Assembly: GCF_009834535.1 (NCBI RefSeq)
Contig: NC_045712.1
Location: 26,474,001 to 26,538,000 of the forward strand
DNA: 64,000 nucleotides
Source of the DNA: Camelus ferus
Taxonomy: Eukaryota
Reading direction: 5' to 3'
In this document: positions 29,145-62,769 of the stretch, piece by piece
How positions within the stretch are numbered: the stretch's first letter is position 1
Layout: each line of letters starts with the position of its first letter
The notes under the pieces: model-generated
The model's database searches: none
The model's input: the letters and a program-made list of their open reading frames with translations, nothing else
What the model was told of the DNA's origin: nothing
Program-made: the position numbers and the translations under genes

Positions 29145-30455
29145 GTTTATTTTTTTCCAGTGTCATTGAGATATAATTGACATACAGCACTGTTTAAGTG
29201 CTTTAGGTGTACAGCATAACTGTTTGACTTACGTATATTGTGAAATGATTAACACAATAACTTTAGTTAACATCTATCATCTCATACAGATACCAAAAGA
29301 AAAAAAAAGTGTTTTCCTTGTGATGAGAACACTTAGGATCTACTCTCTTAACAACTTTGAAATGTACCATACAGCACTGTTAACTGTAGCCATCATTCAT
29401 TATTTATCCTATAACTGAAAGTTTGTACCTTTTGAGCACCTTCGTCCAATCCCTGCCCCAACTGTGGGAACCGCATATCTGATCTCATTTTCTATGAGTT
29501 TGGCGAGGTTTTTTGTTTTTTGTTTTTCATATTCCACATACAAATGAAATCATACAGTATTTGTCTTTCTCTGTGACTTATTTCACTCAGCATAATTATA
29601 TATATATATAGTCTTCTTTATCCAGTCATCCATAGATGAACACATAGGTTATTTCCAGGTCTTGGTTACTGTAAATAACTCTGCTATGAATATGTGGGTG
29701 CAGATATCTCTTCTATANNNNNNNNNNNNNNNNNNNNNNNNNNNNNNNNNNNNNNNNNNNNNNNNNNNNNNNNNNNNNNNNNNNNNNNNNNNNNNNNNNN
29801 NNNNNNNNNNNNNNNNNNNNNNNNNNNNNNNNNNNNNNNNNNNNNNNTCACCAACAGTGCACAAAGGTTCCCTTTTCTCCACATCCTTGCCAGCTTTTGG
29901 TATCTCTTGTCCTTTTGAGGATAGCCATGCTAACAGACATGGGGTGATATCAGACTGTACTTTTGATTTGCACTTCTCTAATATTTAGAGATGTTGAGCA
30001 CCTTTCCATGTACCTGTTGGCCATTCATACATCTTCTTAGGAAAGAATGTCTATTGAGGTCCTATGTCCATTTTTTTAAATTGGATTATTGAGGGGGGGA
30101 GTGTTTGTTANNNNNNNNNNNNNNNNNNNNNNNNNNNNNNNNNNNNNNNNNNNNNNNNNNNNNNNNNNNNNNNNNNNNNNNNNNNNNNNNNNNNNNNNNN
30201 NNNNNNNNNNNNNNNNNNNNNNNNNNNNNNNNNNNNNNNNNNNNNNNNNNNNNNNNNNNNNNNNNNNNNNNNNNNNNNNNNNNNNNNNNNNNNNNAGGTG
30301 TCATATCCAAAATATCATTGCTGAAATGCATGTCAAGGAGCTTTTTTCCCCTATGTAGTCTTCTAGGAGTTTTATGGTTCTTGGGCTTACATTTAAGTCT
30401 TTAATTCATTTCAAGTTAATTTTTGCAACTAGTGTAACACAGAGGCTTAATTTCA
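29145..30455 (-). mobile_element. L1 3' portion (ORF2 end + 3'UTR), broken by two assembly gaps (29718-29847, 30111-30295)
   Basis: GAGATATAATTGACATACAGCACTG, TCACCAACAGTGCACAAAGGTTCCCTTTTCTCCACATCCTTGCCAGC and GATGTTGAGCACCTTTCCATGTACCTGTTGGCCATT L1 motifs. Confidence 0.75.
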
Positions 30456-32085: not shown

Positions 32086-34305
32086 TGAAGCCAAGGTGAT
32101 GGCTAAGATGGACAAGGATAGCCTCTCTCAGTACTAAAATCATCACTCCATCATTGGCTCCCTATTGGACTTCAGGACCTTGGTCTGTCTATCTCTCCAC
32201 TCCCACCATGACCCTACCCCACCCATGCCCATGTAAAGCACTGAGCAGAGTGTCATTCCCCACTCCTACCATGCCAGTTGCTGTGCTTGGCCTAAGCAAT
32301 TTTCACATCAAAACACCCTCCGTTCCCCCGTACTGGGCTCAGGTCCCCTCTATTACACATCCATCACACTGTGGGCGTCACTCCCCAGTAGAACTCACCA
32401 TCCAGAAGTTTACTGTCAAGGAGAATTGACAAGCCAGAGTGTGATGGCTCTTGCTCAGTGCCATTCATGAAAGGGCCTAATACTTGTTCGCTGAGGGGTA
32501 AGAGGTCTAACAGTCAAACAAAATATACTGTCACAGTCAGTCACTTTAGAAGGATCTGACAAGGTCCCCAGACATCCCAGCCAGGAAAAATTACAGCTCC
32601 CTGCTCACAGATTGAGACGGAAACAATGTAAATGTCCATTCCTTTAGACTATAACACACCATGTATGCACGTAGAAGACCTGGTCCATGGCAAGGGAATT
32701 CTGAATAACACCCAAGTAAATTATGAAAGCACAAAGCAGGGCTGAGGATAAGAAGGGTTGCCATGAAAGGAGGATAGGCAACCTTGGGAGGAAATGGAAA
32801 CAGATGAGATCAGCACAGCCCATATCATCCTGATGAGTGAGCCCTCTCTCAGGCTGGACAGTGATGGACCAGCTGTGATGAGCCTGACGTGGAGTATCTT
32901 CTGATTTCCATGTAGTAAATTCTTCCAACAAGGCTAATTCCAAGCAACTAAGAATTCAGTGACCAGCTCAGAAAATCCTGAAATTTTAACAAGTAGCTCT
33001 GAAAGGCTTCTATGCTGTGGCAGAGACACGACACAGTCCCTAGATTTCCTCTGTGAGGTTTCCTCCTTCAACCTGGGGTGACATAGAGTGAGACGCATGA
33101 ATTCATCTAACCTGCCTGAAATTAGCCCCACCTGCTCCCCAAGAACAGACAAGCCTGACAGATTACAGAGCAAAGTACTCTGCGCGGTCCTGCCTCCTGT
33201 CCTTCTCAGACACGGGGCTCTGTGTGTTGGTGCAGGTCGGCCCAGGAGCAGAGCTCAGGCCAGCATTCAAGAGGAAGCAGGTGCTCTGGGAGGCGATTCC
33301 TTCGAAGCACCAGCAGAAAAATAGAGAAGTGAGACCGGGCAGAATCGACATCAGAAGAGGACAAGTCAATAGACAGGTCACTGAAGCGGGGACAGGGGAT
33401 CCACCCAGCTGGGGACCTCAGGGAGGGGGGACACATCTGGGAGTGGGCCCCCCAAGGAGTGAGGAACAGAAGAGACGTTTCCACCAATGAGGGAAAAGTC
33501 CCAGCGATGGTTGGTTGAGGCTGCTCCCGGGAATGCCGCCTCCCCCGTGATTCCAGTCTGCCCCCCAGCAAAGGTCAGCCTACAGAGTGCGGAGTGGGCA
33601 GGACAGGGACAGTGTCTGAAACCCCCAGGCAAACAGACATGTGGCCTGTGTGTCACTGTGTGTGTCTCTCACTCAGGCAGAGCCCTTCACCCCGATGAGC
33701 AGGTGGCTTGCTTCTAATGGTGCCAATTGTGGTACCATTTGATTCTTGAACACAAGCCCACACCTGAAATCTGAGACCCCGCAGAAGAAAGACTGAATTG
33801 TCTCAATGCCCAGAGCAAAAGCCAGGAAGGGTGGGCTCTTGCAGAGTTCAGATTGTGAGGGAAGTCGAACAATCTGGACATTGTACCTGCAGGCTGACCC
33901 TAGAGCCCGCCAGCAGGAAACTGAGCTGTGTCTCCCTGACTGATTAACAAGTGGTCTGGTCCTCCTGGACTGTCACCTCCATACCAGCAGGAACAGCATC
34001 CTAAGCAGCCCTGCACACAGACAAGGTCTCCTTAAGACCCTACTGGATGGAGAAGGAGGAGGGCGGGGGAGTGTGAAGGGCATGGGGTTCCTGGGAATGT
34101 AGACCTGTCATGTCCCTTCCGGCCCTGCTGCCTCCCCCCGCCATCCTGGAAGGAACAGCTGCCACACCCATCTCTGCGTTCACGGAAGTGACCACATTCA
34201 CAGACACACACACGCAAACACACCCACACACAACCTCGGCCTCCCAGCGTTTAGGACCTGGTGACAGTAAGTGGGAGATACCGGAGGAAGTTGTTTTCAG
34301 AACAA

Positions 34306-34311
34306 TTTATT
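34306..34311 (-). terminator. Poly(A) signal, gene A
   Basis: AATAAA about 100 nt after the stop. Confidence 0.7.
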
Positions 34312-34413: not shown

Positions 34414-36279
34414 TCACCGTCGTCTTCTAACAAACGGCCGCGGAAATGGAAATGGTGGTATTGGCGGGATTGGTGGGAAAGGGGGAAATGGGAAGGGTCC
34501 AGGTGGGAATGGTGGTGGAAAAAATCCCCTTACACTCTGGAGCTGTGAACCAGGAAGAAACAGGCTTCTTGTCAGTACTGATCCAGAATCAAAATGATTC
34601 AGGTCCCTTTCTACACATCCTACTCCTGAGCCACTCCTGGAGGCTTGGGTCCCATTCACTCTGTGGCTATAACTTTGGAGCATGTGGTTGAATCCCTACT
34701 CCCATAGACAGATGAGAAAACCAGGACACAGAGATGCCAAGGCCTCCCCGGATCACTGGCCACCACAGCTGGACAGAAGCAGAAGCAGAAATCCCATTAC
34801 TGTAGTCAGTGCCTCTCAAACTTCAGCACAGTCAGAATCCCCAGGAAGGCTTCTTAAAATACAAATTTCTGGGACCCACCCCAACTTTGTCTCAGTAGGT
34901 CTGAATGTGGACTAAGAAGCTGCCTTTCCAATAGTTCCCAGGTGATAATGCCACTTAGAGAACAAACCACTGCTCTAAGGGATTGCAGAGCCCAGGCTGG
35001 AGACTTGGGCTCAGGTAAGGGGGGAGCCAGGGTAGGAAGCCCTGAATGAACAAGAACAAAACTGGTCCAAATGATGTTCCACACCTCTCCCCAGAGCAGC
35101 TCAAAACAAGAAGGGCCACTCACCTTATTACAACTGATGTCTATTTGGTCCTTGACCTGGTCCAGAGTGACTGTCCCCAAACACTGTTTCACCACCTGGA
35201 AGGGGAACCTCCAGTTCAGACTGGAATCCCTGAGCCATAAACACACAGCCTCACCCCAGGGGCTGCTAACCACCCTCCGAAGCCTCTTGTTCGGGTCCTT
35301 GGGAGGCATCCGCCAGCGTTCTCAGCTCCCAGCCTCACCCCTTTCTCCTTGAAGTCACACTGCTCCGGTGGCAGCTGTGTCCTCTTGGGACACACGGTCT
35401 CCTTCACCGTGAAGCTCACAGGCTTCGGGGCGTCTGGGTCCTCATCCTGCTCAAGGATCGAAGTGGGGAGACTGGCTCAGGCTCATGCTTCCTTGGGTGA
35501 CCTGTGTCCCTGCCCCGCAGCAGAACAGCCCTCTTGAAAGCCCATCCCATGTGCCTCGCCCTGGGCTGCGGGCTGGGTGTAGAGGGGAGGAGGACACAGC
35601 CTGGTCCTGGGCTCCCAGGCACACAGGGAGCAGGAGGGGACCTCAGACCCCATCTCATGAGAAGCACATCCCCCTTTGAGGGGCTGAGGGAAGTCAGGGG
35701 CACCTGCAGGGAAAGACCTTGTCACTGGAATCTCCAGGCTGAGCACACCCCTTCTCTGGTGGGGAGACAATGGCATGCACAGGGGATTGGAAGCAGGGAA
35801 TTCACATCCCAGAGCCAGTGACCCCAGCGTATCCCTGGAGCCCCCAGGAGTCCCTGGTGCCTGAGAGGGCTGTCAGGGCTCTGTTCCCACAGCAGAGATG
35901 CCAGGCAGAAGGCTCTCACAAGGGGAGGGGACCCAGCTCTGGGAGGATGTCTGTGAGAGGTGGGATCCCACCTAGAGGGAGAGGTGCCTTCCTGACAGGA
36001 GGTACAGCGCGAGCAAAGGGAGGGACAGTGTGGCCAAGCCTGGCGGGAGACGCCTCCCTCCCCAGCCCCTCCCCGACTCACAGCCTTGGGCGGCAGGTCC
36101 AGCTCCAGGAGGCGGTAGAGATTGGGGTCTGAGGACTGCTCATTGAGGCGATCCACAGCTCGAAGCACCGCCTCCCTAAAGCTCAGGGCCTGGGCGCTGG
36201 CCCAAGGCACCGCTAGTCCCAGCAGCAGTAGCCACAGTGACCAGCGGCGCGTGGAGAGGCTGGCCCTCTGGGTCTCCAT
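34414..36279 (-). CDS. Cathelicidin gene A (CAMP/CATHL family), 168-aa precursor with Pro/Phe-rich mature peptide; exons 36279-36082, 35446-35339, 35195-35124, 34542-34414
   Basis: Canonical cathelicidin layout (198/108/72 nt + peptide exon, GT-AG). Signal [29 protein letters not shown]. Cathelin domain with 4 Cys ([45 protein letters not shown]). Exon 4 LQSV|[38 protein letters not shown]. Confidence 0.95.
34807..34972. mobile_element. MER5A (hAT-Charlie) in intron 3 of cathelicidin A
   Basis: CAGTG.CTCTCAAACTT...CAGAATC...GGGACCCACCCC...CAGTAGGTCTG...TTCCCAGGTGAT...ACCACTG. Homologous copies at 43985-44146 (B), 52953-53117 (C) and 62103-62268 (D), so it predates the duplications. Confidence 0.75.
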
Positions 36280-36319
36280 GGTCCCCGAGTCTGCCTCCTC
36301 CCAGCCCACAGGACCCTCC

Positions 36320-36354
36320 TTTATGCTCAGCCTGGGCCTGATGCAATTGCTCAA
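36320..36354 (-). promoter_or_regulatory. Cathelicidin A proximal promoter: C/EBP site + C/EBP-ATF-like site + TATA-like CATAAA
   Basis: Minus strand TTGAGCAATTGCATCA...GAGCATAAAGG, with CATAAA about 40 nt upstream of the ATG. The same module precedes all four genes. Confidence 0.65.
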
Positions 36355-36912
36355 GCAGGAGCCTTCCCCACCTGCCCCATCCCTGCCCCCGGCCAGGGTG
36401 TGAGCTGGACTTGCCTCAGGCCCCGCTCTTGCCTCAGGGGATTGCTGGGCAGTGGGTGAGGTTGCCTCCTGTGGAAGGTGAAGAAATGGTTTCTCCATCT
36501 CCCTCACAGCATCTCGGCCTCTCCTGGGCCCCATGGGGCAGTTTCATGAGCAGGGTTGCTCCAGAGGGTTGAGTCCTCCAGGAGACGGAGGGACCAGGCT
36601 GTGTCCTAAACCCTCTCGGCCTCCTCACTGTGACCTCCTGAGAATCAAGCTGAAGGAGTGTATTCACCACACAACCTCCATCTCTACACACCGCCTGGCA
36701 CCCAGTAGGCATCTAGTTAAAGTTCGATGAATGGATGACAGCACCACCTCCAACCAAAGCCTGATGCAGTCAGCCAGCACCTGGGCAGACAGTCAAGAAC
36801 CCTCCATCCTGCTCTCTAGACTCAGCCCTCAGCCAGTGAGGGGCTGCGCTCCATCTGTCACCTCTCCTGGATTCTTCTCCACTGCCTTTCTCAACCTAAA
36901 AATGTCTTGTCC

Positions 36913-37798
36913 TGAAGACTTAAACAGATATTTCCCCAATGAAGACATACAGATGGCCAATAGTCACGTGCAAAGATTCTCAATATGGCTAATTATCAGA
37001 TAAATGCAAATCAAAGCTACAGCAAGGTATCAACTCATACTGGTCAGAATGGCCATTATTAAAATGCTGGAGAGGGTCTAGGGAAAAGGGAACCCTCCTA
37101 CATTGTTGATGGGAGTGTAATTTTGTGAAACTGTGATTGAAAACAGTGGAGACCTTTAAAAACTAAAGATAGACTCACTGTATAATCCAGCAACCCTGGG
37201 CATATATCCAGAGGAAACTCTAATTCGAAAAGATACCTGCACCCCAATGTTCATAGCAGCACTGTTTACAATAGCCACGACATGGAAACAGCCTAAATGT
37301 CCATCGACTGGATAAAGAGGCTGTCGTATTTATATACAGTGGAATACTACTCAGCCATAAGAAAGAATAAAATAATGCCTTTTGCAGCGACATGGATGGA
37401 CCCAGACATTATCATACTAAGTGAATAAGCCAGGAAGAGAAAGACAAAAACTACATGATATCACTCATATGTGGACTTTTTAAACGACACAAATGAACTT
37501 ATTTACAAAACAGAAACACACTCACAGACATAGACAACAAACTTATGGCTACCAGGAGTGGGAAAGGGGTGGGGAGGGATAAACTGGGAGTTCAGGATTA
37601 GCAGATGCTACTATATGTAAAATAGACACACAAGGTCCTACTGTATAGCACAGAGAACTATATTGACTATCCTGTAAAAACCTGTACTGAAGAAGAATAT
37701 GAAAAGAAATACATACATGTATAACTGAATCACTATGCTGTATGCCAGAAACTAACACAACGCTGTAACTCAACAATACTTCAATAAAAAAAATGAAT
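36913..37798 (+). mobile_element. 5'-truncated L1 (cetartiodactyl-type 3' end) with target-site duplication
   Basis: ORF2 3' remnant (gaagacttaaacagatatttcc...), L1 3'UTR with G-rich tract and A-rich tail. 15-bp TSD AAAAATGTC(T/G)TGTCC at 36898-36912 and 37799-37813. Confidence 0.9.
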
Positions 37799-40599
37799 AA
37801 AAATGTCGTGTCCCCAGACCCCACTATCTTGTCCTGCTGTCCTGCCTCCCAAAACCAAGCCCGAGATTCCCCACAACCAAGCCTGAGATCGGATCACCCG
37901 CATCGTGACCCCAATGTGTTTTCTCTCACACTCAAGGCCCTATAAGCTGGCCAGCCGTCGCTGGATCCAAAACCCATGCTGACGCGCTGTCTTTATTTAC
38001 ACAGGCTCTGGGCTTCCCTCTGTCCTCCCGCAACCGCCTCCTGCCCCATTCTCTGCTGGTGTCGCTCTCCTGAGTCCCCTCCTGCCACCTTGTTTCCTCT
38101 TTTTTCTCCGTCTCCTCCCAGGACCCTCTTCGTAATACACAGGGCTTGCACAGGTGCACCCAGATGGCTTCTCCTCGCAGTCCTCACACATTCCTGGGCA
38201 CATCCCTTCCTCAGATACCAGTTACCAGGGACACACATCACTGGTCTGTGTCTCTGAGTCAAGACTCCTGTGAACACCCCTGGCTGTCCGCACAGGGCTG
38301 TCTGGGGCTGTCGGCTGGGAGCCCCCACGGGAGCCCTGAGCTGGCAGCCTGGGAGCCCCCACTGGCTCCTTCTTCCTCTGAGGGCCCTCCCTGTCCCCCC
38401 GTCACCCCTGCCCTGTCCTGCCACCACCCCCTCTCCTCTGAAGTGTAGTGACAACCTCCAGACTCCACCGTCTCTGGTTCCAGGCTCTTCTAGAAATCAA
38501 TTCTCCTTCCACATTGTGTCTGGGGGCTCCATCAAATTGCCGATTTGGCCATTTTACCCCCTGCCTTCAGCAGCTCACACACCTCCTCCCGGCATCAGGG
38601 TCTGAACCTTGATGCTTCCCACGGTCCTCACTCGCTGCCCCGCATGCTCAGGTCAGGCTGCCACGTGCACCCCGACCTCTCAGGCCTGTCTCGAGCTCTT
38701 TCCCTTCCTCCCGACTCTGCACCTGATCCCTCTGCTTGCTGTGACCTTCCACCATGTGAAGCCTTGTCTGACCTTCAACCAGAGAAACAGCAACTCCTAT
38801 CTTGGCTCCCACAGCCTCAGGAAGTCTGTTCTGACTTGTCCCCAAGTGACCCCTTCTCCAGGGCTCTGAGGTGGCCAGTGTGGGAGGACAAGGGAGCTCA
38901 GCTGGGAGAATGAATGAGCCAATGTGTTACAGTGGCCCAGAGACCATGACACAAGTTCTAATCCAGTCTCCCATGGAATGACTGGGGTACCAATTGGCCT
39001 CAGGTGACCTGTGGGATTCTCGGTGTTTGGCTGGGGCAAGTCAGAAGGCGATAGTCTGGACAGATGGCCCTGGTTGCACTCTCAGCCATGGAGAAGGAAG
39101 GAGAGAGGGGCTTCTGTGCAACCTGGTAACACAGTCCAGGTGTTGCCCCAGTGGCCTCTTGGTCAAGCTGTATCATTTTCCCAAGTCAGAGTTGGAAAAG
39201 GAGGTGATTACAGGAGAAAATAACTAGCAATAGCCACGGTGACCAGGTATCAGGTCCCCCTGAAATCCTCCCTGTGCTTTCCTGCCTCTGCACCTTTGTG
39301 TTTCCTAAACCTTAGGACTGAGGTCCCCTTCCCCATCCTTCCATGGGGACAGGTGGCTGATCAAGGATGAGGTCTGATAGAGGAGTCAACCCACGGAAAG
39401 AAGTTGGGACCAAAGAGACCAGGATTGATGGTCCAGAAACAGCATCTCTTATTATCAACAGGGCAGAAAGCGGCCCCCGAGGGCTCGATGGGTCCTTAGA
39501 CTCTGGAGTCCAGCAGACATGTGTCTGATCATTGGTTGGCCTCTTATCAGCTGTGACTTCTTTGGGAAAACTCTGCCCTGGTGGGAACTCGCAGCAGCAA
39601 TGAGTGGGAGCCCAGCTCTCATTGTCTCAGACACAACTGAGAAGCCCACACGGGGAGCGGGAGGGTGAGCTGTAGACAGGCGCATCTGGGCACTGCCTCC
39701 ATTTCCTGCATTCCCTGGCTGAGTTCTTGCTTAGACAGCGAGAGGAGCAGGGTGAGAGGGAAGGGGGTCTAAGGAGCCGGGTCAGGACTGGGAGGGTCTC
39801 CAAGGTCACAGTAGCTGTGCCTCGAGATGGTCAGGCTAGGCCTTGGGTTCTCTCCTAACGTTCCCCCCAACCCAACAGAGGACACCCCAGCCAAGAGGTG
39901 GGAGCAGACGGTCCTGCTGGAGCTGGTAAGGGTGTGTTTCCACCGCCTGGCACCCTACGTGGGTTCCCTCCTTTCCCATCCCCCTCTATTTCCCATCCCA
40001 GTCTGGTTGAGGCAGACATCCCATCCTGCAGTTAAAACCCCCAACTGGAAAAAGCACAGTCTCACCTGTGTTTAGACACTTCCTTATCCCAGCCCCAAGC
40101 CCTGGACTTCAAAATGGTACAAGAGAAGGAGCCAGGGTCAGGGCTGAGCGACCTGTCCTCTGGTCCTGCCTTCTGCCCAACCTGGGGAGCACATACGTGA
40201 CCTTAAACCAGACCTTCACCAACTGCACCTCTTTCTCCTGGTTTGTAAAATGGGAGATTTCTTACACATGCATGGGAGGCCCTCTTCTCCTCCATAGAGA
40301 AACTCCTCCCATACGAACTTGGACATGAGGATCAGAGTCCCAGTCTCTACAGAGCCTTCCAGACTCCTGGGGGAAAGAGGGACAGCAGCCATCCACTCCA
40401 TAGCCACCCCCAGGACATGCTCACATGGAGAGCCTGCCACAGCACAGGCCATTGTCGGCGTCCCCCTGAAGTCCCACTTGTCGGGAGCCTCACTCACGTG
40501 CATGGGGAGGAAGAAACCATGGTGCTTCCTTGTATCTTTGTTGGGCCGAGTTGGGGAACTAGAAACCCTTGAGACACGTATTGGTGCGAATGCTATGTC

Positions 40600-49107: not shown

Positions 49108-49207
49108 NNNNNNNNNNNNNNNNNNNNNNNNNNNNNNNNNNNNNNNNNNNNNNNNNNNNNNNNNNNNNNNNNNNNNNNNNNNNNNNNNNNNNNNNNNNNN
49201 NNNNNNN
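49108..49207. other. 100-N assembly gap near the centre of the inverted duplication
   Basis: Exactly 100 Ns, the usual convention for a gap of unknown size. Confidence 0.95.
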
Positions 49208-51552
49208 ACAGTTTTGTTCTGGTCCAGTTCCATTGCTCTGGAGCCTCTGGAGTCTCACAGACAGGAAGGATGGTTGGGAGGAGAAAAGGAGCCGGGACGT
49301 CCAGATCATGGCTAATTTCCTGAGTTGTTGGCACGACGGGTGCATGAGGGTTTCTCAGGATCAGATGTGGAGTCAGGGGCCAACCAACCTGGGGCAAGGC
49401 AGAGGGGCCTTTCCTGAGAAACACGTCTGCTCTGACAGGCTGTGAGGACAACCAGGAAAGTCAGATGCTAAGCAGGGACAGCAACACCCCCATCCAGGCA
49501 GTTGTAGTCTGAGGACCTGACAGGCGACCTTCCAAGGACCCAGACTGCGGTCCAAAGTCTGAGCAAACGCAAAGGTGCAGAGGCAGGAAGCACGAGAGGA
49601 TTTCAAGGGGATCTGATACCCGTCACCGTGGGTTTTTGCTAGTTATTTTCTACTGCAATCACCTCCTTTTCTTCCTCCTTCTTGGGAAAAGATACAGCTT
49701 GACCAAGAGGCCACTGGGGCAACACCCGGACTGTGACACCAGGTTGCACAGAAGCCCCTCTCCTTCCTTTTCGAAGGGTGAGTGCGAAACCAGCACATCC
49801 GACCAGGCTGTTACCTTCTGAGGTGCCCCATTCCGTTGCCCAGAGTCCCCAGGTCACAGGTGGCCATGGCCTATCCCAGGCCTTCAGTCTCAGGGCCATT
49901 CCATGGACACTGGATTAGAATTGGCATCTGGTCTCTGGGATCCTCTAACACATCGGCTCATTCACTTTCCCAGCTGGACCCCCTCCCTCCTCCCTCTCGG
50001 CCACTCCATCCTGGTGTCTCAACCTGAGCCCTGGAGAGGGAGTACCTTGGGGACAAGTCAGAAGAGACTTTGTGAGGCTGTGGGAGCTAGATGGGGAGTT
50101 GCTGTTTCTCTGGTTGAAGGTCAGATAAGGCTTCACAAAACGAAAAGTCACGGCAGTCCGAGGGATCAGGTGTAGCGATATGGAAGAGCAGAGGCTCCGA
50201 GGGGCCTGAGAGGTTGGGGTGGACGTGGCGGCCTGACACAGGGTTTGCAGTGAGCACCTGAGGACAACCTGATCCAGACCCTGAGCCCTGACTCAAGGCG
50301 GGAGGTTGATGGACCCTGGACAATGGCAGGGAACACTGGGCTGTGTGTGGGAAGAGCCTGGAACCAGAAAAGGTGGAGTCTGGAGGTTTGGCTACACTTC
50401 AGAGGAGAGGAGATGGTGGTAGGACAGGGCAGGGTGACAGTGGGGACAAGGGCCCTCAGAGAAGAAGGAGCAGGTGGGGTTCCCAGGCTCTCAGCTCAGG
50501 GCTCCCGTGAGGGCTCCTAGCCAACAGCCCCAGACAGCCCTGTGCTGACAACCAGGAGTGTTCACAGAGTGTTGCCTCGGACCACAGACCAGTGATGTGT
50601 GTCCCTGATAACTAGTATCTGAGGAAGGGATGTGCCCAGAATGCATGAGAACTGCTTTGAGAAGCTGTACAGATCACGTGTGCAAGCCCTGCAGTAAAAG
50701 TTTTATTTAAAGTTGAGTACTTAGATTAGACAGAGCAGGAGGCACCCAGGAGGCCAGGAAGTTGGACCCAGGAAGGTGTCCCAGGGGAGAATGGGGGAGG
50801 GCAGTTTCAGTAGACAGAGGGGTCCCTGGCACCTGTGAAGGCAAGGACAAGGCTTCAGCATGGCCGTTGTATCATTCGAAAGCTGTTAACAGGCATGGAC
50901 CTTGAGTTGAAAGAGGACAATAGTGGGGTCAGAGTGTAGATGAGCCTTCTCTTACTGGCTGTCTGGGTAAGGGGAACAGTGTGCATCTGGAAGGGCTGGG
51001 ACAGGACATTTTTAGAGTGAAGAAGGCAAAGGAGAAGAATCCAGAAGAGGGGACAGTGGAGGAGATGCCCTGACTGGCTGAGGGCTGGGTCCGCAGAATA
51101 GGACGGTGTGGCCCTGATGTCTGCCTAGGGAGTGGATGGGTGTGAAAGGCACTAGATGGGGGTGGTCCTGCCATCTATTCATGATATGTTAACTGAGTGC
51201 CTACTGGGGGCCAGGAGGCCCAGGAGCTGGAGGTTGTGTGGTGAATACACTCTTTCAGCCTGATTCTGAGGAGATCACAGTGAGGAGGCCGAGAGGGTGT
51301 AGGACACAGCCATTCCCTCTGTATCCTGGAGGACTCAACCCTCTGGAGCAACCCTGCCCATGAAACTCCCCATGGGGCCCAGGAGAGGCCGAGATGCTGT
51401 CAGGGAGATGGAGAAACCTTTTCTTCACCTTCCACAGGAGGCAGACCTCACCCACTGCCCAGCAATCCCCTGAGGCAAGAGCGGGGCCTGAGGCAAGTCC
51501 AGCTCACACCCTGGCCGGGGGCAGGGATGGGGCAGGTGGGGAAGGCTCCTGC

Positions 51553-51587
51553 TTGAGCAATTGCATCAGGCCCAGGCTGAGCATAAA
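51553..51587 (+). promoter_or_regulatory. Cathelicidin C proximal promoter module (C/EBP + TATA-like)
   Basis: TTGAGCAATTGCATCA...CATAAA intact. Confidence 0.65.
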
Positions 51588-51626
51588 GGAGGGTCCTGTG
51601 GCTGGGAGGAGGCAGATTCGCGGACC

Positions 51627-53476
51627 ATGGAGACCCAGAGGCAAGCCTCTCCCTGGGCCACTGCCACTGTGGCTACTGCTGCTGGGACTAGCGGTGCTTG
51701 GGCCAGCGCCCAGGCCCTGAGCTATAGGGAGGCGGTGCTTCGAGCTGTGGATCGCCTCAATGAGCAGTCCTCAGACCCCAATCTCTACCGCCTCCTGGAG
51801 CTGGACCTGCCGCCCAAGGCTGTGAGTCGGGAGGGCTGGGAGGGAGGCGTCTCCCGCCAGGCTTGGCCACACTGTCCCTCCCTTTGCTCGCGCTGTACCT
51901 CCTGTCAGGATGGCACCTCTCCCTCTAGGTGGGATCCCACCTCTAACAGAAATCTTCCCAGAGCTGGGTCCCTTCCCGTCGTGAGAACCTTCTGAGTGGC
52001 ATCTATGCTGTGGGAACAGAGCCCTGACAGCCCGCTCAGGCTCCAGGGACTCCTTGGGGCTCCAGGGATACGCCGGGGTCACTGGCTCTGGGATGTGACT
52101 TCCCTGCTTCCAGTCCCCTGTGCACCCCATTGTCTTCCCACCAGGGAAGGGCTGTGCTCAGCCCGGGTGTTCCAGTTTCAAGGTCTTTCCCTGCAGGTGT
52201 CCCCTGACTTCCCTCAGCCTCTCCAAGTAGAGTTGCCCCTCAGGAGAGCGGGTATGAGTTCCATTCCTGCTCCCTGTGTGGTGGGAGCTCAAGACTAGGC
52301 TGTGTCCTCCTCTCCTCTGCACCCAGCTCCCAGCCCAGGGCCAGGCACATGGGACGGGCTGTCAAGGGGGCTGTCCTGCTGGGGGCAGGGACACAGGTCA
52401 CACAAAGAAGCATGAGCCTGAGCCAGTCTCCCTACTTTGATCCTTGAGCAGGACGAGGACCCAGATGCCCCGAAGCCTGTGAGCTTCACGGTGAAGGAGG
52501 ACCGTGTGTCCCAAGAGGACACAGCTGCCTCCGGAGCAGTGTGACTTCAAGGAGAATGGGGTGAGGCTGGGGGCTTCGGGCGCTGGTGGGTGCCTCCCAA
52601 GACCCAAACAGGAGCCTTGGGGCAGGTGGTGGTTAGGAGCCCCTGTGGTGAGTCTGGGTGTTTATGGCTCAGGGGTTCCAGTGTGACTTGGAGTCTCCCC
52701 TTCCAGGTGGTGAAACAGTGTTTGGGGACAGTCAACCTGTACCAGCTCAGGGACAACAACTTCGATATAACATGTAATGAGGTGAGTGACCCCTTATGGG
52801 CTGCAGGGGCTACTGATGGAGGTGGTGTGTGAAACAGCCTTTGGACCAATTCCCCGCTGTGCCATCCCTGTAGTGGCAGGAGGGACCTCCTCCCCTGGCT
52901 CCCCCTTACCTGAGCCCCAGGTCTCCAGGCCGGGCTCTGCAGTCCCTTAGAGCAGTGGTTCTCTCAGTGGGCTCCTCTCTTGGGAACTAGAGAAAAAGGC
53001 TGATTCTCACGCATGACTCAGACCTACAGAATCATTGTGTGATGTGGAGCCCAGTAATTTCTATTTTAAGAGCCCTTCTGAAGGATTTCTGAGTGTGCTG
53101 AAGCTTGAGAGGCAGTGACTAGAGACAGGACCTTTCTGCCCCTGCTCCCGTCCTGCTTTTCTGAGATGGGTTTGTGCCCCTGGGAAGCCCCCTGTCATCT
53201 CTGGACCTTGGTCCTCATCTGTCTGTGGGAGTGATGATTCAACCACGTGCTCCAAGTGACACAGACAAGGAGGTCTAATGGTGCCTCAAGTCTCCTTCGG
53301 TGTTCCAAGATAGAAGATTTTCAGATGGGGAGGGATCTGGTCTTGTCCCTAAGTCAGTCCTCACAAGAATCCTGTTTCCTTCTGCTTCACAGCTCCAAAG
53401 TGTCGGGTTATTTGGCCCGATTCTTGGTATCGTCCGTGCCGGTGTGAAATTGGTTCTAGATAAGTTTGGCAAATAA
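51627..53476 (+). pseudogene. Cathelicidin gene C (pseudogene as assembled, possibly intact gene with sequencing indels); exons 51627-51821, 52452-52560, 52707-52781, 53393-53476
   Basis: Exon 1 is 195 nt: three single-base deletions scramble the signal peptide ([29 protein letters not shown]) and then restore frame. Exon 2 is 109 nt: a +1 G near 52500 leads to TGA at 52542-52544. Exon 3 is 75 nt (extra AAC). Exon 4 LQSV|GLFGPILGIVRAGVKLVLDKFGK*. Splice sites, promoter module and AATAAA (53558) are intact. Confidence 0.75.
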
Positions 53477-53557
53477 TCGGATAGATTGGTGATAAAATTC
53501 GCCCAGGGTAGAGTCCTAATGATCACCTAACTCTGGCTCAGTTGTTCAAACTCTGGA

Positions 53558-53563
53558 AATAAA
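53558..53563 (+). terminator. Poly(A) signal, gene C
   Basis: AATAAA at the position homologous to gene B. Confidence 0.65.
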
Positions 53564-56500
53564 TTCTTATGAATTTCAAATTCACCTGTCTCTTGTCCTA
53601 CTCTTACCAGGGGTCCTTAACCCCCATTGCCCTCTTGAGTGTGTGTGTGTGTGTGCGCGTGTGTGGTCACTACCGTGAACACAGAGATGGGTGTGGCAGC
53701 TGTTCCTTCCAGGAGGGCAGGGGGAGGCAGCAGGGCCGGGAGGGACAGGACAGGGCTCCATTCTCAGGAACCCCATGCCCTTCACACTCCCCCGCCCTCC
53801 TCCTCCTCCACCAAGTAGGGGCTTAAAGAGACCTAGTCTGTGTGCAGTGCTGCTGGGGATGCTGTTCCTCCTGGTATGGAGGTGACAGTCCAGGAGGACC
53901 AGGTCGCTTGTTAATCACTCGGGGAGACACAGCTCTGTCTCCTGCTGGTGGGCTCTAAGGTCAGCCTGCAGGTACAATGTCCAGATTGTTCCACTTCCCT
54001 CACAATCTGAACACTGAAAGAGCCCACCCTTCTTGGCTTTTGCTCTGGGCATTGAGACACATCAGTCTTTCTCCTGCGGGGTCTCAGATTTCAGATGTGG
54101 GCTTGTGTTCAGGGATCCAATGGTACCACAATTGGCACCATTAGAAGCAAGCCTCCTGCTCATCGGGGTGAAGGGCTCTGCCTGAGTGAGAGACACACAC
54201 AGTGACACACAGGCCACATGTCTGTTTGCCTGGGGGTTTCAGACACTGTCCCTGTCCTGCCCACTCCCCACTCTGTAGCTGACCTTTGCTGGGGGGCAGA
54301 CTGGAATCACGGGGGAGGCGGCAGTCCCGGGAGCAGCCTCAACCAACCATCGCTGGGACTTTTCCCTCATTGGTGGAAACGTCTCTTCTGTTCCTCACTC
54401 CTTGGGGGGCCCACTCCCAGATGTGTCCCCCCTCCCTGAGGTCCCCAGCTGGGTGGAGCCCCTGTCCCCGCTTCAGTGACCTGTCTATTGACTTGTCCTC
54501 TTCTGATGTCGATTCTGCCCGGTCTCACTTCTCTATTTTTCTGCTGGTGCTTCAAAGGAATCGCCTCCCAGAGCACCTGCTTCCTCTTGAATGCTGGCCT
54601 GAGCTCTGCTCCTGGGCCAACCTGCACCAACACACAGAGCCCCGTGTGTCAGAGGGACAGCGGGCGGGACCGCGCAGAGCACGTGCTCTGTAATCTGTCA
54701 GGCTCGTCTGTTCTTGGGGAGCAGTTGGGGCTGATTTCAGGCAGGTTAGAGGAACCCATGCTTCTCACTCTACGTCACCCCAGGTTGAGTGAGGTTCTAC
54801 AGAGGAAACTAAGGGAATTCCTTCTGTCTGCCGCTGGGTACTTCATTGCGACAGGCAGAACAGAGACCGGGGGAGGATCTGAACCACGTCACTGAGCCCC
54901 CCAGCCCCAGACAGGAGCCTGCAGGTGCTGTGGGGGCTGGGGGCCCTGTTGGGGATGGGTGCTGAGGCTCAGGCTTCCGAGGGCAGACCCTAGGAGTGGT
55001 CTGGGATTGGCAGTGTGGGGACCGCCTGAGAGGGCTGGAGCGCGGTAAGGGCTGAAACTGGGAGTGTGTGCGAAGGAATCGGTCTGTCATAACCCCCGTT
55101 ATTAGGTTGCTGCGGAGGGAGGAGCGGAACTCCTCACTCTGCCTGGCCCGCTGGCCCCTGGGAGCTGTGGGAGGGCAGAGTGCTGGGGCAGAGGCGGGGC
55201 CCAGGTCTGAGCCCATTCTCAGAATGAGCTAAGTTCAAGGTTGTTGTGTGGGTTTGGCCGCTGCAGCTGTTCAGCCTCCAAGACATCCATTTACACCTGT
55301 GCATGAACAAGGTCCCTGTGCTCAGTGGGCAGGGTTGTGGGCTGTGATGCTTGCCCCGGAAGACAGCCCCCAAAATTTATCTTGTTCACTCTGTCTGTGC
55401 CTCCCTAGTGGTTCTAACTGGGGCCACAGTTGTGGACATTCGCCCTCACTGGCCCTGAAATAGGTAAATGAACGGTGACTGTCCCTGCTGAGCAAGGCAT
55501 CCCCTGCTTGGAGGTCACGTCCACTGGGGAGAGATTTTCTATGGAGAGGAGGGGAGATGCCCTCCTCTCTCCAGCCCCATCTCACTGAGTTTGGTAACTG
55601 CTCTCAGAGCAGCTCTGGGACCCTTCCCATCGCCAAGGCAAAACCTGCTTCTGGGGTTGTCATAGTGACAACACTGTGAAGAGCACCTGGGCCCACGGAG
55701 TCCTACACCCATCGTGCCTCCTCCTCCTGCTCCTCCTCCCTCCTCACCCACTTCTTTTTAATTGTAAGCATTGTTAAGGGACATATCCTCCTTATAAAAT
55801 ATTCAAGCAATCCTAGTACAAATACACTCCTTTTGACAACTTGCTTTCCTGCCTCACGCATCACAATCTCCACATTAGAAACAACCTCCATTCATCAATC
55901 GTGTGAGTGTCTGTTCTGATGTTTTTTCTAGACATGTATATACATATAGGCACATAAAGATACCGTGTCTTGCTTTATGGTGACTGATGTTTACATAAAT
56001 GGAATCAGTTAGTACGTTTATTTTGCAATTGGCCTTTTCCCCTTAAAGATACATCTGGCAACTTTCTAGTTTTAAAACCTTCAATTGAAATATTACAACT
56101 ACATAAGAAAAACACACCACTGATAAATGGACAGCTTGCTGAGTGCTTGCTATGTGAACGCCAAAGTGTAATCAGCACCCAGAAGTCTCCTCCCCCTTCT
56201 ACCCTTAACCATGACCCCGACTTTGAACGCCACAGATCAGTGATGCCAGATTTTGAAATGTGTAGAAAATAGAACCATACCGTATATACGCTTTTCAGGT
56301 AATTTCTTCATGCAACATGTTTGTGAGAATCCTCCGTGTTATTGTGTGTAATTATCTTCGTTCATATTTTGTTGCTAAGTTGTAGTCCCGCTGTATAAAT
56401 ATACCAGAATACGCTTATTCTTTTACTTGTGAAGGATATTTGGGTAGTTGCCAGCTCATTTTTGAAACGGCTGCACTGTAGTCCATATGGTGGACATAGC

Positions 56501-59294: not shown

Positions 59295-60180
59295 ATTCAT
59301 TTTTTTTATTGAAGTATTGTTGAGTTACAGCGTTGTGTTAGTTTCTGGCATACAGCATAGTGATTCAGTTATACGTGTATGTATTTCTTTTCATATTCTT
59401 CTTCAGTACAGGTTTTTACAGGATAGTCAATATAGTTCTCTGTGCTATACAGTAGGACCTTGTGTGTCTATTTTACATATAGTAGCATCTGCTAATCCTG
59501 AACTCCCAGTTTATCCCTCCCCACCCCTTTCCCACTCCTGGTAGCCATAAGTTTGTTGTCTATGTCTGTGAGTGTGTTTCTGTTTTGTAAATAAGTTCAT
59601 TTGTGTCGTTTAAAAAGTCCACATATGAGTGATATCATGTAGTTTTTGTCTTTCTCTTCCTGGCTTATTCACTTAGTATGATAATGTCTGGGTCCATCCA
59701 TGTCGCTGCAAAAGGCATTATTTTATTCTTTCTTATGGCTGAGTAGTATTCCACTGTATATAAATACGACAGCCTCTTTATCCAGTCGATGGACATTTAG
59801 GCTGTTTCCATGTCGTGGCTATTGTAAACAGTGCTGCTATGAACATTGGGGTGCAGGTATCTTTTCGAATTAGAGTTTCCTCTGGATATATGCCCAGGGT
59901 TGCTGGATTATACAGTGAGTCTATCTTTAGTTTTTAAAGGTCTCCACTGTTTTCAATCACAGTTTCACAAAATTACACTCCCATCAACAATGTAGGAGGG
60001 TTCCCTTTTCCCTAGACCCTCTCCAGCATTTTAATAATGGCCATTCTGACCAGTATGAGTTGATACCTTGCTGTAGCTTTGATTTGCATTTATCTGATAA
60101 TTAGCCATATTGAGAATCTTTGCACGTGACTATTGGCCATCTGTATGTCTTCATTGGGGAAATATCTGTTTAAGTCTTCA
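59295..60180 (-). mobile_element. Mirror copy of the truncated L1 upstream of gene D
   Basis: Reverse complement of 36913-37798 with the same flanking TSD. Confidence 0.9.
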
Positions 60181-60738
60181 GGACAAGACATTTTAGGTTG
60201 AGAAAGGCAGTGGAGAAGAATCCAGGAGAGGTGACAGATGGAGCGCAGCCCCTCACTGGCTGAGGGCTGAGTCTAGAGAGCAGGATGGAGGGTTCTTGAC
60301 TGTCTGCCCAGGTGCTGGCTGACTGCATCAGGCTTTGGTTGGAGGTGGTGCTGTCATCCATTCATCGAACTTTAACTAGATGCCTACTGGGTGCCAGGCG
60401 GTGTGTAGAGATGGAGGTTGTGTGGTGAATACACTCCTTCAGCTTGATTCTCAGGAGGTCACAGTGAGGAGGCCGAGAGGGTTTAGGACACAGCCTGGTC
60501 CCTCCGTCTCCTGGAGGACTCAACCCTCTGGAGCAACCCTGCTCATGAAACTGCCCCATGGGGCCCAGGAGAGGCCGAGATGCTGTGAGGGAGATGGAGA
60601 AACCATTTCTTCACCTTGCACAGGAGGCAGACCTCACCCACTGCCCAGCAATCCCCTGAGGCAAGAGCGGGGCCTGAGGCAAGTCCAGCTCACACCCTGG
60701 CCGGGGGCAGGGATGGGGCAGGTGGGGAAGGCTCCTGC

Positions 60739-60773: not shown

Positions 60774-60813
60774 GGAGGGTCCTGTGGGCTGGGAGGAGGC
60801 AGACTCGGGGACC

Positions 60814-62661
60814 ATGGAGACCCAGAGGGCCAGCCTCTCCCTGGGCCGCTGGTCACTGTGGCTACTGCTGCTGGGACTAGCGGTGCCTTGGGCCAGCGCC
60901 CAGGCCCTGAGCTATAGGGAGGCGGTGCTTCGAGCTGTGGATCGCCTCAATGAGCAGTCCTCAGACCCCAATCTCTACCGCCTCCTGGAGCTGGACCTGC
61001 CGCCCAAGGCTGTGAGTCGGGGAGGGGCTGGGGAGGGAGGCGTCTCCCGCTAGGCTTGGCCACACTGTCCCTCCCTTTGCTCGCGCTGTACCTCTCCCTC
61101 TAGGTGGGATCCCACCTCTCACAGACATCCTCCCAGAGCTGGGTCCCCTCCCCTTGTGAGAGCCTTCTGCCTGGCATCTCTGCTGTGGGAACAGAGCCCT
61201 GACAGCCCTCTCAGGCACCAGGGACTCCTGGGGGCTCCAGGGATACGCTGGGGTCACTGGCTCTGGGATGTGAATTCCCTGCTTCCAATCCCCTGTGCAT
61301 GCCATTGTCTCCCCACCAGAGAAGGGGTGTGCTCAGCCTGGAGCTTCCAGTGACAAGGTCTTTCCCTGCAGGTGCCCCTGACTTCCCTCAGCCCCTCAAA
61401 GGGGGATGTGCTTCTCATGAGATGGGGTCTGAGGTCCCCTCCTGCTCCCTGTGTGCCTGGGAGCCCAGGACCAGGCTGTGTCCTCCTCCCCTCTACACCC
61501 AGCCCGCAGCCCAGGGCGAGGCACATGGGATGGGCTTTCAAGAGGGCTGTTCTGCTGCGGGGCAGGGACACAGGTCACCCAAGGAAGCATGAGCCTGAGC
61601 CAGTCTCCCCACTTCGATCCTTGAGCAGGATGAGGACCCAGATGCCCCGAAGCCTGTGAGCTTCACGGTGAAGGAGACCGTGTGTCCCAGGAGGACACAG
61701 CTGCCACCGGAGCAGTGTGACTTCAAGGAGAAAGGGGTGAGGCTGGGAGCTGAGAACGCTGGCGGATGCCTCCCAAGGACCCGAACAAGAGGCTTCGGAG
61801 GGTGGTTAGCAGCCCCTGGGGTGAGGCTGTGTGTTTATGGCTCAGGGATTCCAGTCTGAACTGGAGGTTCCCCTTCCAGGTGGTGAAACAGTGTTTGGGG
61901 ACAGTCACTCTGGACCAGGTCAAGGACCAAATAGACATCAGTTGTAATAAGGTGAGTGGCCCTTCTTGTTTTGAGCTGCTCTGGGGAGAGGTGTGGAACA
62001 TCATTTGGACCAGTTTTGTTCTTGTTCATTCAGGGCTTCCTACCCTGGCTCCCCCCTTACCTGAGCCCAAGTCTCCAGCCTGGGCTCTGCAATCCCTTAG
62101 AGCAGTGGTTTGTTCTCTAAGTGGCATTATCACCTGGGAACTATTGGAAAGGCAGCTTCTTAGTCCACATTCAGACCTACTGAGACAAAGTTGGGGTGGG
62201 TCCCAGAAATTTGTATTTTAAGAAGCCTTCCTGGGGATTCTGACTGTGCTGAAGTTTGAGAGGCACTGACTACAGTAATGGGATTTCTGCTTCTGCTTCT
62301 GTCCAGCTGTGGTGGCCAGTGATCCGGGGAGGCCTTGGCATCTCTGTGTCCTGGTTTTCTCATCTGTCTATGGGAGTAGGGATTCAACCACATGCTCCAA
62401 AGTTATAGCCACAGAGTGAATGGGACCCAAGCCTCCAGGAGTGGCTCAGGAGTAGGATGTGTAGAAAGGGACCTGAATCATTTTGATTCTGGATCAGTAC
62501 TGACAAGAAGCCTGTTTCTTCCTGGTTCACAGCTCCAGAGTGTAAGGGGATTTTTTCCACCACCATTCCCACCTGGACCCTTCCCATTTCCCCCTTTCCC
62601 ACCAATCCCGCCAATACCACCATTTCCATTTCCGCGGCCGTTTGTTAGAAGACGACGGTGA
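60814..62661 (+). CDS. Cathelicidin gene D (inverted copy of gene A), 168-aa precursor with the same Pro/Phe-rich peptide; exons 60814-61011, 61629-61736, 61880-61951, 62533-62661
   Basis: 198/108/72/129-nt exons, GT-AG, open frame. Signal [29 protein letters not shown]. Exon 4 translates identically to gene A. Confidence 0.93.
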
Positions 62662-62763: not shown

Positions 62764-62769
62764 AATAAA
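62764..62769 (+). terminator. Poly(A) signal, gene D
   Basis: AATAAA at the position homologous to gene A. Confidence 0.7.

What the first reader, a model, noticed from the sequence alone, without database searches (positions are those of the whole stretch)
34414..34542. Pro/Phe-rich cathelicidin with reversed charge layout (C-terminal RRRR, no amidation Gly)
Seen in sequence: the predicted mature 38-mer [38 protein letters not shown] has 18 Pro, 9 Phe and 6 Arg, built from PPF/PPI triplets, and is identical in gene D (62533-62661). Established: ribosome-targeting Pro-rich cathelicidins (Bac7, PR-39, Bac5) carry their Arg cluster at the N-terminus, and PR-39/Bac5 end in G-K/R-R. Porcine prophenins are FPPP-rich and weakly cationic. 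Here five of six Arg are C-terminal and no Gly precedes them. Inference: either a polyproline-II peptide with a cationic tail and a different mechanism, or the tail is trimmed by carboxypeptidase to leave a roughly +2 prophenin-like peptide. As far as I recall it differs from the Arg-rich alpaca peptide VicBac.
Basis: partly seen in the sequence, partly recalled or inferred. Interest (0 to 1): 0.7.

Follow-up and report, generated by a model that had tools for sequence, protein, structure and literature searches.

The report
Known camel Pro/Phe-rich cathelicidin (Vp38-like)
This is the last exon of an intact, expressed camel antimicrobial-peptide (cathelicidin) gene whose odd proline/phenylalanine-rich 38-residue peptide was already listed in a 2022 genome-mining paper and in RefSeq, but has never been tested for function.

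Summary
Window 34414-34542 (minus strand) and 62533-62661 (plus strand) both encode LQSV followed by the same 38-mer (18 Pro, 9 Phe, 6 Arg) ending VRRRR-stop. Both exons belong to intact four-exon cathelicidin genes (A and D, 168 aa, Pfam PF00666).

The peptide is not new. The window is Camelus ferus. Genes A and D are identical to the RefSeq proteins XP_032314497.1 and XP_032314496.1 ('protegrin-2-like'). Panteleev et al. 2022 (PMC9146984, Table S2) list it as the 'Vp38-like cathelicidin' of three Camelus species, the ortholog of alpaca VpCATH-38. I found no functional test of it.

New here:
- Spliced transcripts with the exact exon 3/exon 4 junction occur in runs from four studies.
- The RRRR tail differs from the alpaca RGRR amidation signal by one GGA/AGA transition.
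- The core (residues 7-30) has 0 nonsynonymous and 4 synonymous changes against alpaca. The charged ends have 6 and 0.
- Exon 4 and its 3'UTR are colinear with hippo and pig PR-39-type genes, not with the camel prophenin-like gene.
- The inverted gene pair is also present in C. bactrianus and alpaca assemblies.

The mechanism remains inferred. The sequence is already known, the biochemistry is open, and interest is modest.

The parts
34414..34542 (-). Gene A exon 4, coding part (LQSV, 38-mer, stop)
   Evidence: Translation. Acceptor cag|CTC. RNA contigs match with zero differences.
34417..34530 (-). Gene A coding sequence of the predicted mature 38-mer, after the elastase-type site QSV|R
   Evidence: The cleavage site is inferred by analogy with Bac5, PR-39 and VicBac precursors (PMC9146984).
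34417..34428 (-). Four Arg codons AGA AGA CGA CGG. The second AGA corresponds to GGA (Gly) in alpaca.
35124..35195 (-). Gene A exon 3 (cathelin domain)
   Evidence: The junction 34542|35124 is seen in RNA contigs of X2, X6, X14 and X25.
35339..35446 (-). Gene A exon 2 (cathelin domain)
   Evidence: The exon 2/3 junction is seen in X2, X3 and X14.
36082..36279 (-). Gene A exon 1 (signal peptide and start of the cathelin domain)
   Evidence: The exon 1/2 junction appears as a loose end at 35446 in X29.
36318..36325 (-). TATA-like CATAAAGG box upstream of the gene A start codon
   Evidence: The alpaca gene has the same element marked as a TATA box in PMC9146984 Fig. S4.
34306..34311 (-). AATAAA polyadenylation signal of gene A. 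RNA contigs end at 34291-34295.
60814..61011 (+). Gene D exon 1
61629..61736 (+). Gene D exon 2
61880..61951 (+). Gene D exon 3
62533..62661 (+). Gene D exon 4 coding part, nucleotide-identical to that of gene A
62764..62769 (+). AATAAA polyadenylation signal of gene D

Best explanation
Identity (shown). Window 34414-34542 and 62533-62661 are the fourth exons of two inverted, intact, transcribed copies (A and D) of one Camelus ferus cathelicidin gene. The product is a 168-aa prepropeptide: a signal peptide of about 29 residues, a cathelin-like domain with four Cys, the elastase-type site QSV|R, and a 38-residue Pro/Phe-rich peptide. This is the Camelus 'Vp38-like' cathelicidin catalogued in 2022, the ortholog of alpaca VpCATH-38.

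Origin (shown and inferred). Exon 4 and its 3'UTR descend from the PR-39/Bac5-type lineage of Pro-rich cathelicidins, not from prophenins. With hippo as outgroup, the Camelus lineage lost two N-terminal Arg (positions 2 and 6). It also turned the Gly of the ancestral R-G-R-R amidation signal into Arg by a single GGA to AGA transition. This produced the 'reversed' charge layout. The hydrophobic (PPX)n core stayed under purifying selection.

How it works (inferred). The proform is stored in neutrophil granules and elastase releases the peptide, which adopts an extended polyproline-II shape. My estimate is about 60% that the basic carboxypeptidases which strip the G-K/R-R tails of its relatives also trim some or all of the four terminal Arg. 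That would leave a weakly cationic (about +2), non-amidated 34-37-mer. Such a peptide would act, like other low-charge Pro/Phe peptides, as a weak non-lytic agent on the Gram-negative envelope or as an immunomodulator. It would not be a Bac7-type ribosome blocker. The confidence of 0.85 applies to identity and origin; the mechanistic steps carry the lower odds given here.
For: - Gene models with GT-AG introns and open frames.
- Pfam PF00666, E = 3e-47.
- Gene A equals P0123 and gene D equals P0121, both RefSeq C. ferus proteins.
- Window 50814-64000 is identical to GCA_009834535.1 CM020784.1.
- Table S2 and the text of PMC9146984 list Vp38-like peptides of three Camelus species, described as 38 residues with a (PPX)4 motif.
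- In 5.8 billion proteins only the camel and alpaca clusters share the mature peptide.
- Spliced contigs carry the exact exon 3/4 junction and an error-free exon 4 in X2, X6, X14 and X25, from four studies.
- The camel codons GTT AGA AGA CGA CGG correspond to alpaca ATT AGA GGA CGA CGG.
- Core residues 7-30 show 0 nonsynonymous and 4 synonymous differences. The ends show 6 and 0. Fisher p = 0.005.
- C. dromedarius differs in exon 4 by one synonymous change only.
- The 3' part of gene D aligns in one piece through exon 4 and the 3'UTR with the hippo PR-39-like gene (68.8% over 1163 columns) and pig PR-39 (66% over 953 columns). Alignments to camel paralogs B, C, CamBac and prophenin-like break at the start of exon 4.
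- Codon-shuffle test of the coding part against hippo: z = 4.6.
- All other Pro-rich cathelicidins retrieved end G-K/R-R or G-R.
- The class I ribosome consensus (R/K)XX(R/Y)LPRPR is absent.
Against: - No protein-level data exist: the N-terminus, the C-terminus and any activity are predictions.
- Trimming of the tail is an inference from the processing of GRR and GKR tails. From my own recollection, the bovine dodecapeptide keeps a C-terminal Arg, and the 2022 authors treat the Arg-rich tail of LamBac as unmodified.
- The total Arg count is 6 in both camel and alpaca. If the tail is kept, net charge is preserved (about +6 against about +5), which would fit a compensatory relocation of charge rather than a loss.
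- Similarity of the coding part to pig PR-39 alone is not significant (z = 1.7). The lineage assignment therefore leans on hippo and on the flanking sequence.
- The Table S2 text available here is a machine-read PDF with a garbled middle (35 letters). The exact match rests on its ends, on the stated length of 38 and on RefSeq.
Confidence: 0.85

Rival explanations
1. The RRRR tail is kept in the mature peptide and acts as its cationic module for binding or uptake. The Arg lost at the N-terminus would then be compensated, giving a Pro-rich peptide of inverted polarity with its own mode of action.
For: The Arg count is 6 in both camel and alpaca but is moved from the N-terminal to the C-terminal end. 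All six camel/alpaca differences are nonsynonymous and four are Arg/Gly or Arg/Pro exchanges. The tail is identical in three Camelus species. A second camelid peptide, LamBac, also ends in an Arg run where its alpaca ortholog has a G-R signal. Rumicidins show that a mammalian Pro-rich peptide can carry its ribosome-binding part in the C-terminal half (PMC11484942).
Against: Without Gly there is no amidation, so a free C-terminal Arg run is the preferred substrate of basic carboxypeptidases. The same cells must have such an activity to process GRR and GKR tails (established knowledge, not tested here). No ribosome-binding consensus is present. The 29 residues before the only PRP motif are nearly uncharged.
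Confidence: 0.3
2. It is a class I (Bac7, PR-39 or oncocin-type) ribosome-targeting peptide taken up through SbmA, like its PR-39-lineage relatives.
For: Exon 4 is homologous to PR-39-type exons. The alpaca ortholog keeps an N-terminal RRFFPR and an amidation signal.
Against: The consensus (R/K)XX(R/Y)LPRPR is absent. Only one Arg lies in the first 30 residues. PMC9146984 singled out VicBac, not the Vp38 group, as the ribosome-inhibitor candidate.
Confidence: 0.1
3. The peptide part is decaying. With the Arg lost, the gene's remaining role lies in the cathelin domain or there is no role.
For: The cationic residues typical of the lineage were lost. No activity data exist.
Against: The core has 0 nonsynonymous against 4 synonymous differences from alpaca. 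There is one synonymous and no nonsynonymous change against dromedary. Both copies are intact and spliced mRNA is present in several studies.
Confidence: 0.08
4. The second copy (gene D) is an assembly artefact, a mis-scaffolded haplotype around the 100-N gap at 49108-49207.
For: The arms are 99-100% identical, and a gap lies about 600 bp from the centre of symmetry.
Against: A and D differ at four residues. Each has its own closest counterpart in an independent C. bactrianus assembly (99.88% and 99.49%, against 99.04% between A and D). The inverted pair is present in C. bactrianus and alpaca chromosomes. Inner genes B and C encode different peptides.
Confidence: 0.03

Closest known systems
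VpCATH-38 and the 'Vp38-like cathelicidins' (Panteleev et al. 2022, PMC9146984)
   Same: This is the same family, and for Camelus the same peptide. It has 38 residues and a central (PPX)4 motif. It shares 32 of 38 residues with alpaca P0125, and the gene structure is the same.
   Different: Camel has G2, P6, R31, F33, V34 and R36 where alpaca has R2, R6, G31, I33, I34 and G36. Alpaca therefore keeps an N-terminal Arg cluster and an R|GRR amidation signal, and camel has neither.
PR-39 (pig) and the hippo 'PR-39-like' peptide P0049 (PR-39/Bac5-type Pro-rich cathelicidins)
   Same: Intron 3, exon 4 and the 3'UTR are colinear at DNA level. They share the QSV|R start, an RRF-type beginning (in alpaca) and an ending on two basic residues before the stop.
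   Different: Those peptides carry Arg every 3-5 residues and end G-K/R-R. The camel peptide has an almost uncharged core and no Gly. The ribosome-binding consensus of PR-39 is absent.
Prophenin-1/-2 (pig) and camel prophenin-like cathelicidins (P0011)
   Same: Very high Pro and Phe content, low charge density, and a likely polyproline-II shape.
   Different: There are no FPPPNFPxxR-type decamer repeats. The peptide is much shorter. Exon 4 does not align with the camel prophenin-like exon. The likeness is compositional only.
LamBac (Lama Bac7-like cathelicidin, PMC9146984 Table S2)
   Same: It is a camelid Pro-rich cathelicidin whose tail is an Arg run where the alpaca ortholog has a Gly-Arg signal.
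   Different: It is a different gene (Bac7-like). It is Arg-rich throughout and carries the N-terminal ribosome-binding consensus.
Rumicidins (PMC11484942)
   Same: They are a precedent for a mammalian Pro-rich cathelicidin whose functional contacts lie in the C-terminal half, with the N-terminus serving uptake.
   Different: Rumicidins are 28-30 residues long, Arg-rich and mostly end in GKR, and their ribosome binding is defined by cryo-EM. No sequence relation to the camel peptide was found.

Membership tests
Cathelicidin | N-terminal signal peptide followed by a cathelin-like domain (Pfam PF00666) with four conserved Cys | tested here: met
   PF00666 covers residues 30-129 at E = 2.9e-47 (A) and 2.5e-48 (D). 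Four Cys are present in the translated exons 2-3.
Cathelicidin | Gene of four exons, with the variable peptide on exon 4 | tested here: met
   Exons of 198, 108, 72 and 129 nt, all with GT-AG introns. All three junctions are seen in RNA contigs.
Cathelicidin | Release of the peptide by elastase at a Val or Ala site at the start of exon 4 | not testable with these tools
   The QSV|R site is conserved, as in the Bac5, PR-39 and CamBac precursors. Cleavage itself needs protein data.
Vp38-like cathelicidins (Panteleev 2022) | 38-residue Pro-rich peptide with a central (PPX)4 motif, camelid | tested here: met
   38 residues, with [12 protein letters not shown] at positions 16-27. Listed for C. ferus, C. 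bactrianus and C. dromedarius. 32 of 38 residues are identical to alpaca.
Class I ribosome-targeting Pro-rich peptides (Bac7, PR-39, oncocin) | Consensus (R/K)XX(R/Y)LPRPR near an Arg-rich N-terminus | tested here: not met
   The pattern search found nothing. Only R1 lies in the first 30 residues.
Class I ribosome-targeting Pro-rich peptides (Bac7, PR-39, oncocin) | SbmA-dependent uptake and inhibition of translation | not testable with these tools
   This needs synthetic peptide and assays.
PR-39/Bac5-type lineage | Homologous exon 4 and 3'UTR | tested here: met
   A single alignment runs through exon 4 and the 3'UTR with hippo (68.8% over 1163 columns) and pig (66% over 953 columns). Hippo coding part: z = 4.6. 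Pig coding part alone: z = 1.7.
PR-39/Bac5-type lineage | C-terminal G-K/R-R amidation signal | tested here: not met
   Camel ends V-R-R-R-R-stop. Alpaca and hippo keep G-R-R.
Prophenin | Tandem FPPPN(F/V)PxPR-type decamer repeats and a homologous exon 4 | tested here: not met
   There are no such repeats. The alignment to the camel prophenin-like gene stops in intron 3, and the codon-shuffle z is 0.2.

The most novel reading that the evidence does not exclude
In Camelus the oligo-Arg tail survives processing. It would turn a PR-39-lineage peptide into a new functional type: a nearly uncharged polyproline-II rod with a C-terminal cationic anchor. Such a peptide would enter bacteria or bind its target with polarity opposite to Bac7-type peptides. 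The change would have arisen through only three point substitutions, one of which destroyed the amidation signal.
Probability: 0.12. Interest if true: 0.6.

Novelty: already known. Interest (0 to 1): 0.28.

Why it matters
The sequence is not a discovery: it is in RefSeq and in a published catalogue. What remains open is the biochemistry. Alpaca and camel orthologs share an identical conserved hydrophobic core and carry their charges at opposite ends, and one has an amidation signal while the other does not. That makes a natural matched pair for asking two questions: what the Arg cluster and the amidation do in Pro-rich host-defence peptides, and whether low-charge Pro/Phe peptides have an antibacterial role at all. 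The answer would help in the design of Pro-rich antimicrobials, but it would not overturn current views.

Tried and rejected
- The plus-strand reading at 34414-34542 is meaningless; the exon is on the minus strand.
The gaps were found by script instead.
- The first protein search failed because the coordinates were reversed and was repeated.
- A spliced protein cannot be given by reference. I therefore searched with exon 1 plus intron read-through and recovered the full-length database proteins that way.
- A search for functional work on VpCATH-38 or Vp38 found only the two papers that merely name it.
- The dromedary 2026 paper tested three other peptides, and its supplement holds no fragment of this one.
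- The prophenin relationship was rejected at DNA level.
- The assembly-artefact explanation of the duplicate was rejected.
- SH3-ligand patterns (PxxPxR/K and R/KxxPxxP) are absent.
- My first pig PR-39 extraction used the wrong end of a 19-kb gene record. It was corrected.
- I did not fetch a bovine Bac5 gene, so the relation to Bac5 proper is untested.
- No structure prediction was run, because it is not informative for a Pro-rich peptide.

Full report
OBSERVATION. The stretch 34414-34542 is coding on the minus strand. There it translates to LQSV, a 38-residue peptide and a stop. The plus-strand reading is meaningless. The second copy at 62533-62661 is on the plus strand and gives the same product. 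The two copies and their flanks are nucleotide-identical over more than 375 bp. The 38-mer has 18 Pro, 9 Phe, 6 Arg, 2 Gly, 2 Ile and 1 Val. [12 protein letters not shown] occupies residues 16-27 and Arg sits at positions 1, 31 and 35-38.

ANATOMY. Each exon is the last of four.
- Gene A (minus strand) has exons 36279-36082, 35446-35339, 35195-35124 and 34542-34414.
- Gene D (plus strand) has exons 60814-61011, 61629-61736, 61880-61951 and 62533-62661.
- All introns are GT-AG and both reading frames are open for 168 codons.
- The products match Pfam Cathelicidin over residues 30-129 at E about 1e-47.
- A TATA-like CATAAAGG box lies about 40 nt upstream of each ATG, and an AATAAA lies about 100 nt after each stop.
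- A and D differ at four residues (10, 11, 34, 87), all outside the mature peptide.
- Between A and D lie two more cathelicidin genes. B ends in a 35-residue helical-type peptide and C in a 23-residue one.
- Against gene B, the promoter through exon 2 is 84-100% identical and the downstream DNA is 85-99% identical. The coding part of exon 4 cannot be aligned. This is the usual cathelicidin pattern.

IDENTITY.
- Window 50814-64000 is identical to Camelus ferus assembly GCA_009834535.1, CM020784.1.
- Gene A is identical to P0123 (XP_032314497.1). Gene D is identical to P0121 (XP_032314496.1 of C. ferus and XP_064352647.1 of C. dromedarius). Both are named 'protegrin-2-like' by automatic annotation.
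- Panteleev et al. 2022 (PMC9146984) mined all camelid genomes. [quoted passage not shown]
- Their Table S2 lists 'Vp38-like cathelicidins' of C. dromedarius, C. ferus and C. bactrianus that begin RGFFPPP and end [10 protein letters not shown].
- The copy I could read is a machine-read PDF whose repetitive middle is garbled. It also spells the alpaca peptide three different ways. The exact match therefore rests on the two ends, the stated length and the RefSeq proteins of the same species.
- That paper did not test the peptide. The only other paper naming it (PMC12872550) tested three other camel peptides.
- A search of 5.8 billion proteins with the mature part alone found only the camel and alpaca clusters.

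EXPRESSION.
- Contigs of RNA-labelled runs X2, X6, X14 and X25, from four studies, join 34542 directly to 35124. This removes the predicted intron 3, whose ends read CT..AC on the plus strand.
- These contigs cover exon 4 and the 3'UTR without a single difference and end at 34291-34295, just past the AATAAA.
- The exon 2/3 junction and an exon 1/2 junction are also seen.
- A spliced junction cannot come from contaminating DNA, so the gene is transcribed and correctly spliced.
- At least ten RNA-labelled runs hold all sampled words of exon 4. Tissue and cell type are not given.

THE DUPLICATE. The region 33.2-64 kb is a large palindrome (A, B | C, D) centred near 48,550, with a 100-N gap at 49108-49207. 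It is not a scaffolding artefact, for three reasons.
- A and D each have their own closest counterpart in an independent C. bactrianus assembly: 99.88% and 99.49%, against 99.04% between A and D.
- The two copies are inverted on the C. bactrianus chromosome and on the alpaca chromosome.
- B and C encode different peptides.
The two copies are about 64 kb apart in C. bactrianus against 24.5 kb here, so the gap probably hides sequence. Within each lineage the copies are more alike than between lineages (alpaca pair 97.7%, camel to alpaca about 95%). This suggests either gene conversion or independent duplication.

EVOLUTION OF THE PEPTIDE.
- Camel and alpaca peptides share 32 of 38 residues.
- The tail codons are GTT AGA AGA CGA CGG TGA in camel and ATT AGA GGA CGA CGG TGA in alpaca. 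The RRRR run therefore differs from the alpaca R-G-R-R by one transition. The 2022 authors mark R|GRR as the alpaca processing site.
- All other Pro-rich cathelicidins retrieved here end G-K/R-R or G-R.
- Residues 7-30 show 4 synonymous and 0 nonsynonymous differences. The six N-terminal plus eight C-terminal residues show 0 and 6 (Fisher p = 0.005).
- C. dromedarius differs by one synonymous change only.
- The core is therefore constrained, while the charge-bearing ends changed by replacements only. Four of those replacements exchange Arg with Gly or Pro.
- The 3' part of gene D aligns in one piece through exon 4 and the 3'UTR with a hippo gene (P0049, 'PR-39-like'; 68.8% over 1163 columns) and with pig PR-39 (66% over 953 columns). 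Alignments to camel B, C, CamBac and the prophenin-like gene stop at or before the start of exon 4.
- A codon-shuffle test of the coding part gives z = 4.6 for hippo, 1.7 for pig, -0.5 for CamBac and 0.2 for prophenin-like.
- With hippo as outgroup, R2, an Arg at position 5 or 6, and the Gly of GRR are ancestral. Camelus lost them. R31 may be ancestral.
- The 'reversed' layout is thus a derived Camelus state of a PR-39/Bac5-type peptide. Its likeness to prophenin is compositional.

MECHANISM (inferred). By the established cathelicidin pathway the proform is stored in neutrophil granules and elastase cuts after the Val of QSV. With 47% Pro the peptide can only be extended, most likely polyproline-II. 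It lacks the class I ribosome-binding consensus and has one Arg in its first 30 residues, so I rate a Bac7-like action at about 0.1. Without Gly there is no amidation. The cells that process GRR and GKR tails must have a basic carboxypeptidase, and plasma and cell-surface enzymes of the same kind remove C-terminal Arg. I therefore put about 0.6 on partial or full loss of the tail, which would give a peptide of about +2. Against this, the Arg count is the same in camel and alpaca. If the tail is kept, net charge is preserved, which would fit a compensatory relocation. LamBac shows a second camelid Arg tail. I give the kept-tail reading 0.3 and a truly new mode of action about 0.12. None of this can be settled from sequence.

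VERDICT. The peptide is a known, catalogued and annotated member of the camelid Vp38-like cathelicidins, and it is expressed. Its novelty as a sequence is refuted, and its function is still untested. The modest new points are the one-transition origin of the tail, the constrained core with replacement-only ends, the PR-39-lineage homology, and the conserved inverted gene pair. A sister note of this scan (s1-149015) reached the same 'already listed in the 2022 paper and RefSeq' verdict for gene C on this window.

Noticed in passing
window 33175-64000: A large palindrome of four cathelicidin genes (A, B | C, D) centred near 48,550. The spacer arms 36899-40506 and 56587-60194 are 100% identical. 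The inverted Vp38 pair also exists in C. bactrianus (copies about 64 kb apart, against 24.5 kb here) and in alpaca (about 87 kb apart). The 100-N gap at 49108-49207 therefore probably hides tens of kb. Copies are more alike within a lineage than between lineages, which fits gene conversion or independent duplication.
   Followed up: partly
window 51620-51700 and about 52500: In this assembly gene C (23-residue peptide) has three single-base deletions in the signal-peptide part of exon 1 and a one-base insertion in exon 2. All four lie in short homopolymer runs. No gene is called at that position in the C. ferus record (L006), whereas the dromedary record (L005) has one there. This is either a pseudogene or assembly indel errors.
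   Followed up: partly
L008:3024-3152: The PR-39 exon 4 in the pig reference chromosome reads ...GFPPRFPRKR-stop. It is one PPRF unit shorter than the RefSeq PR-39 precursor P0023 and has Arg where P0023 has the amidation Gly. This is a second case of Gly replaced by Arg in the tail of this lineage.
   Followed up: no
window 35444-35449 (gene A) and 61626-61631 (gene D): There is a tandem acceptor (cag|cag-type) at the start of exon 2. RefSeq isoforms of 169 aa (P0122, and alpaca P0125 and P0126) carry an extra Gln there.
   Followed up: no
window 29718-29847, 30111-30295, 49108-49207: Three runs of N (130, 185 and 100 bases).
   Followed up: no
window 36192-36315 in run X5: One RNA-labelled run carries the gene A spelling of exon 1. 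X2, X3 and X6 carry the gene D spelling at 36179-36252. Both exon 1 spellings therefore occur in RNA-labelled runs. X5 also covers intron 1, so DNA or pre-mRNA cannot be excluded.
   Followed up: partly
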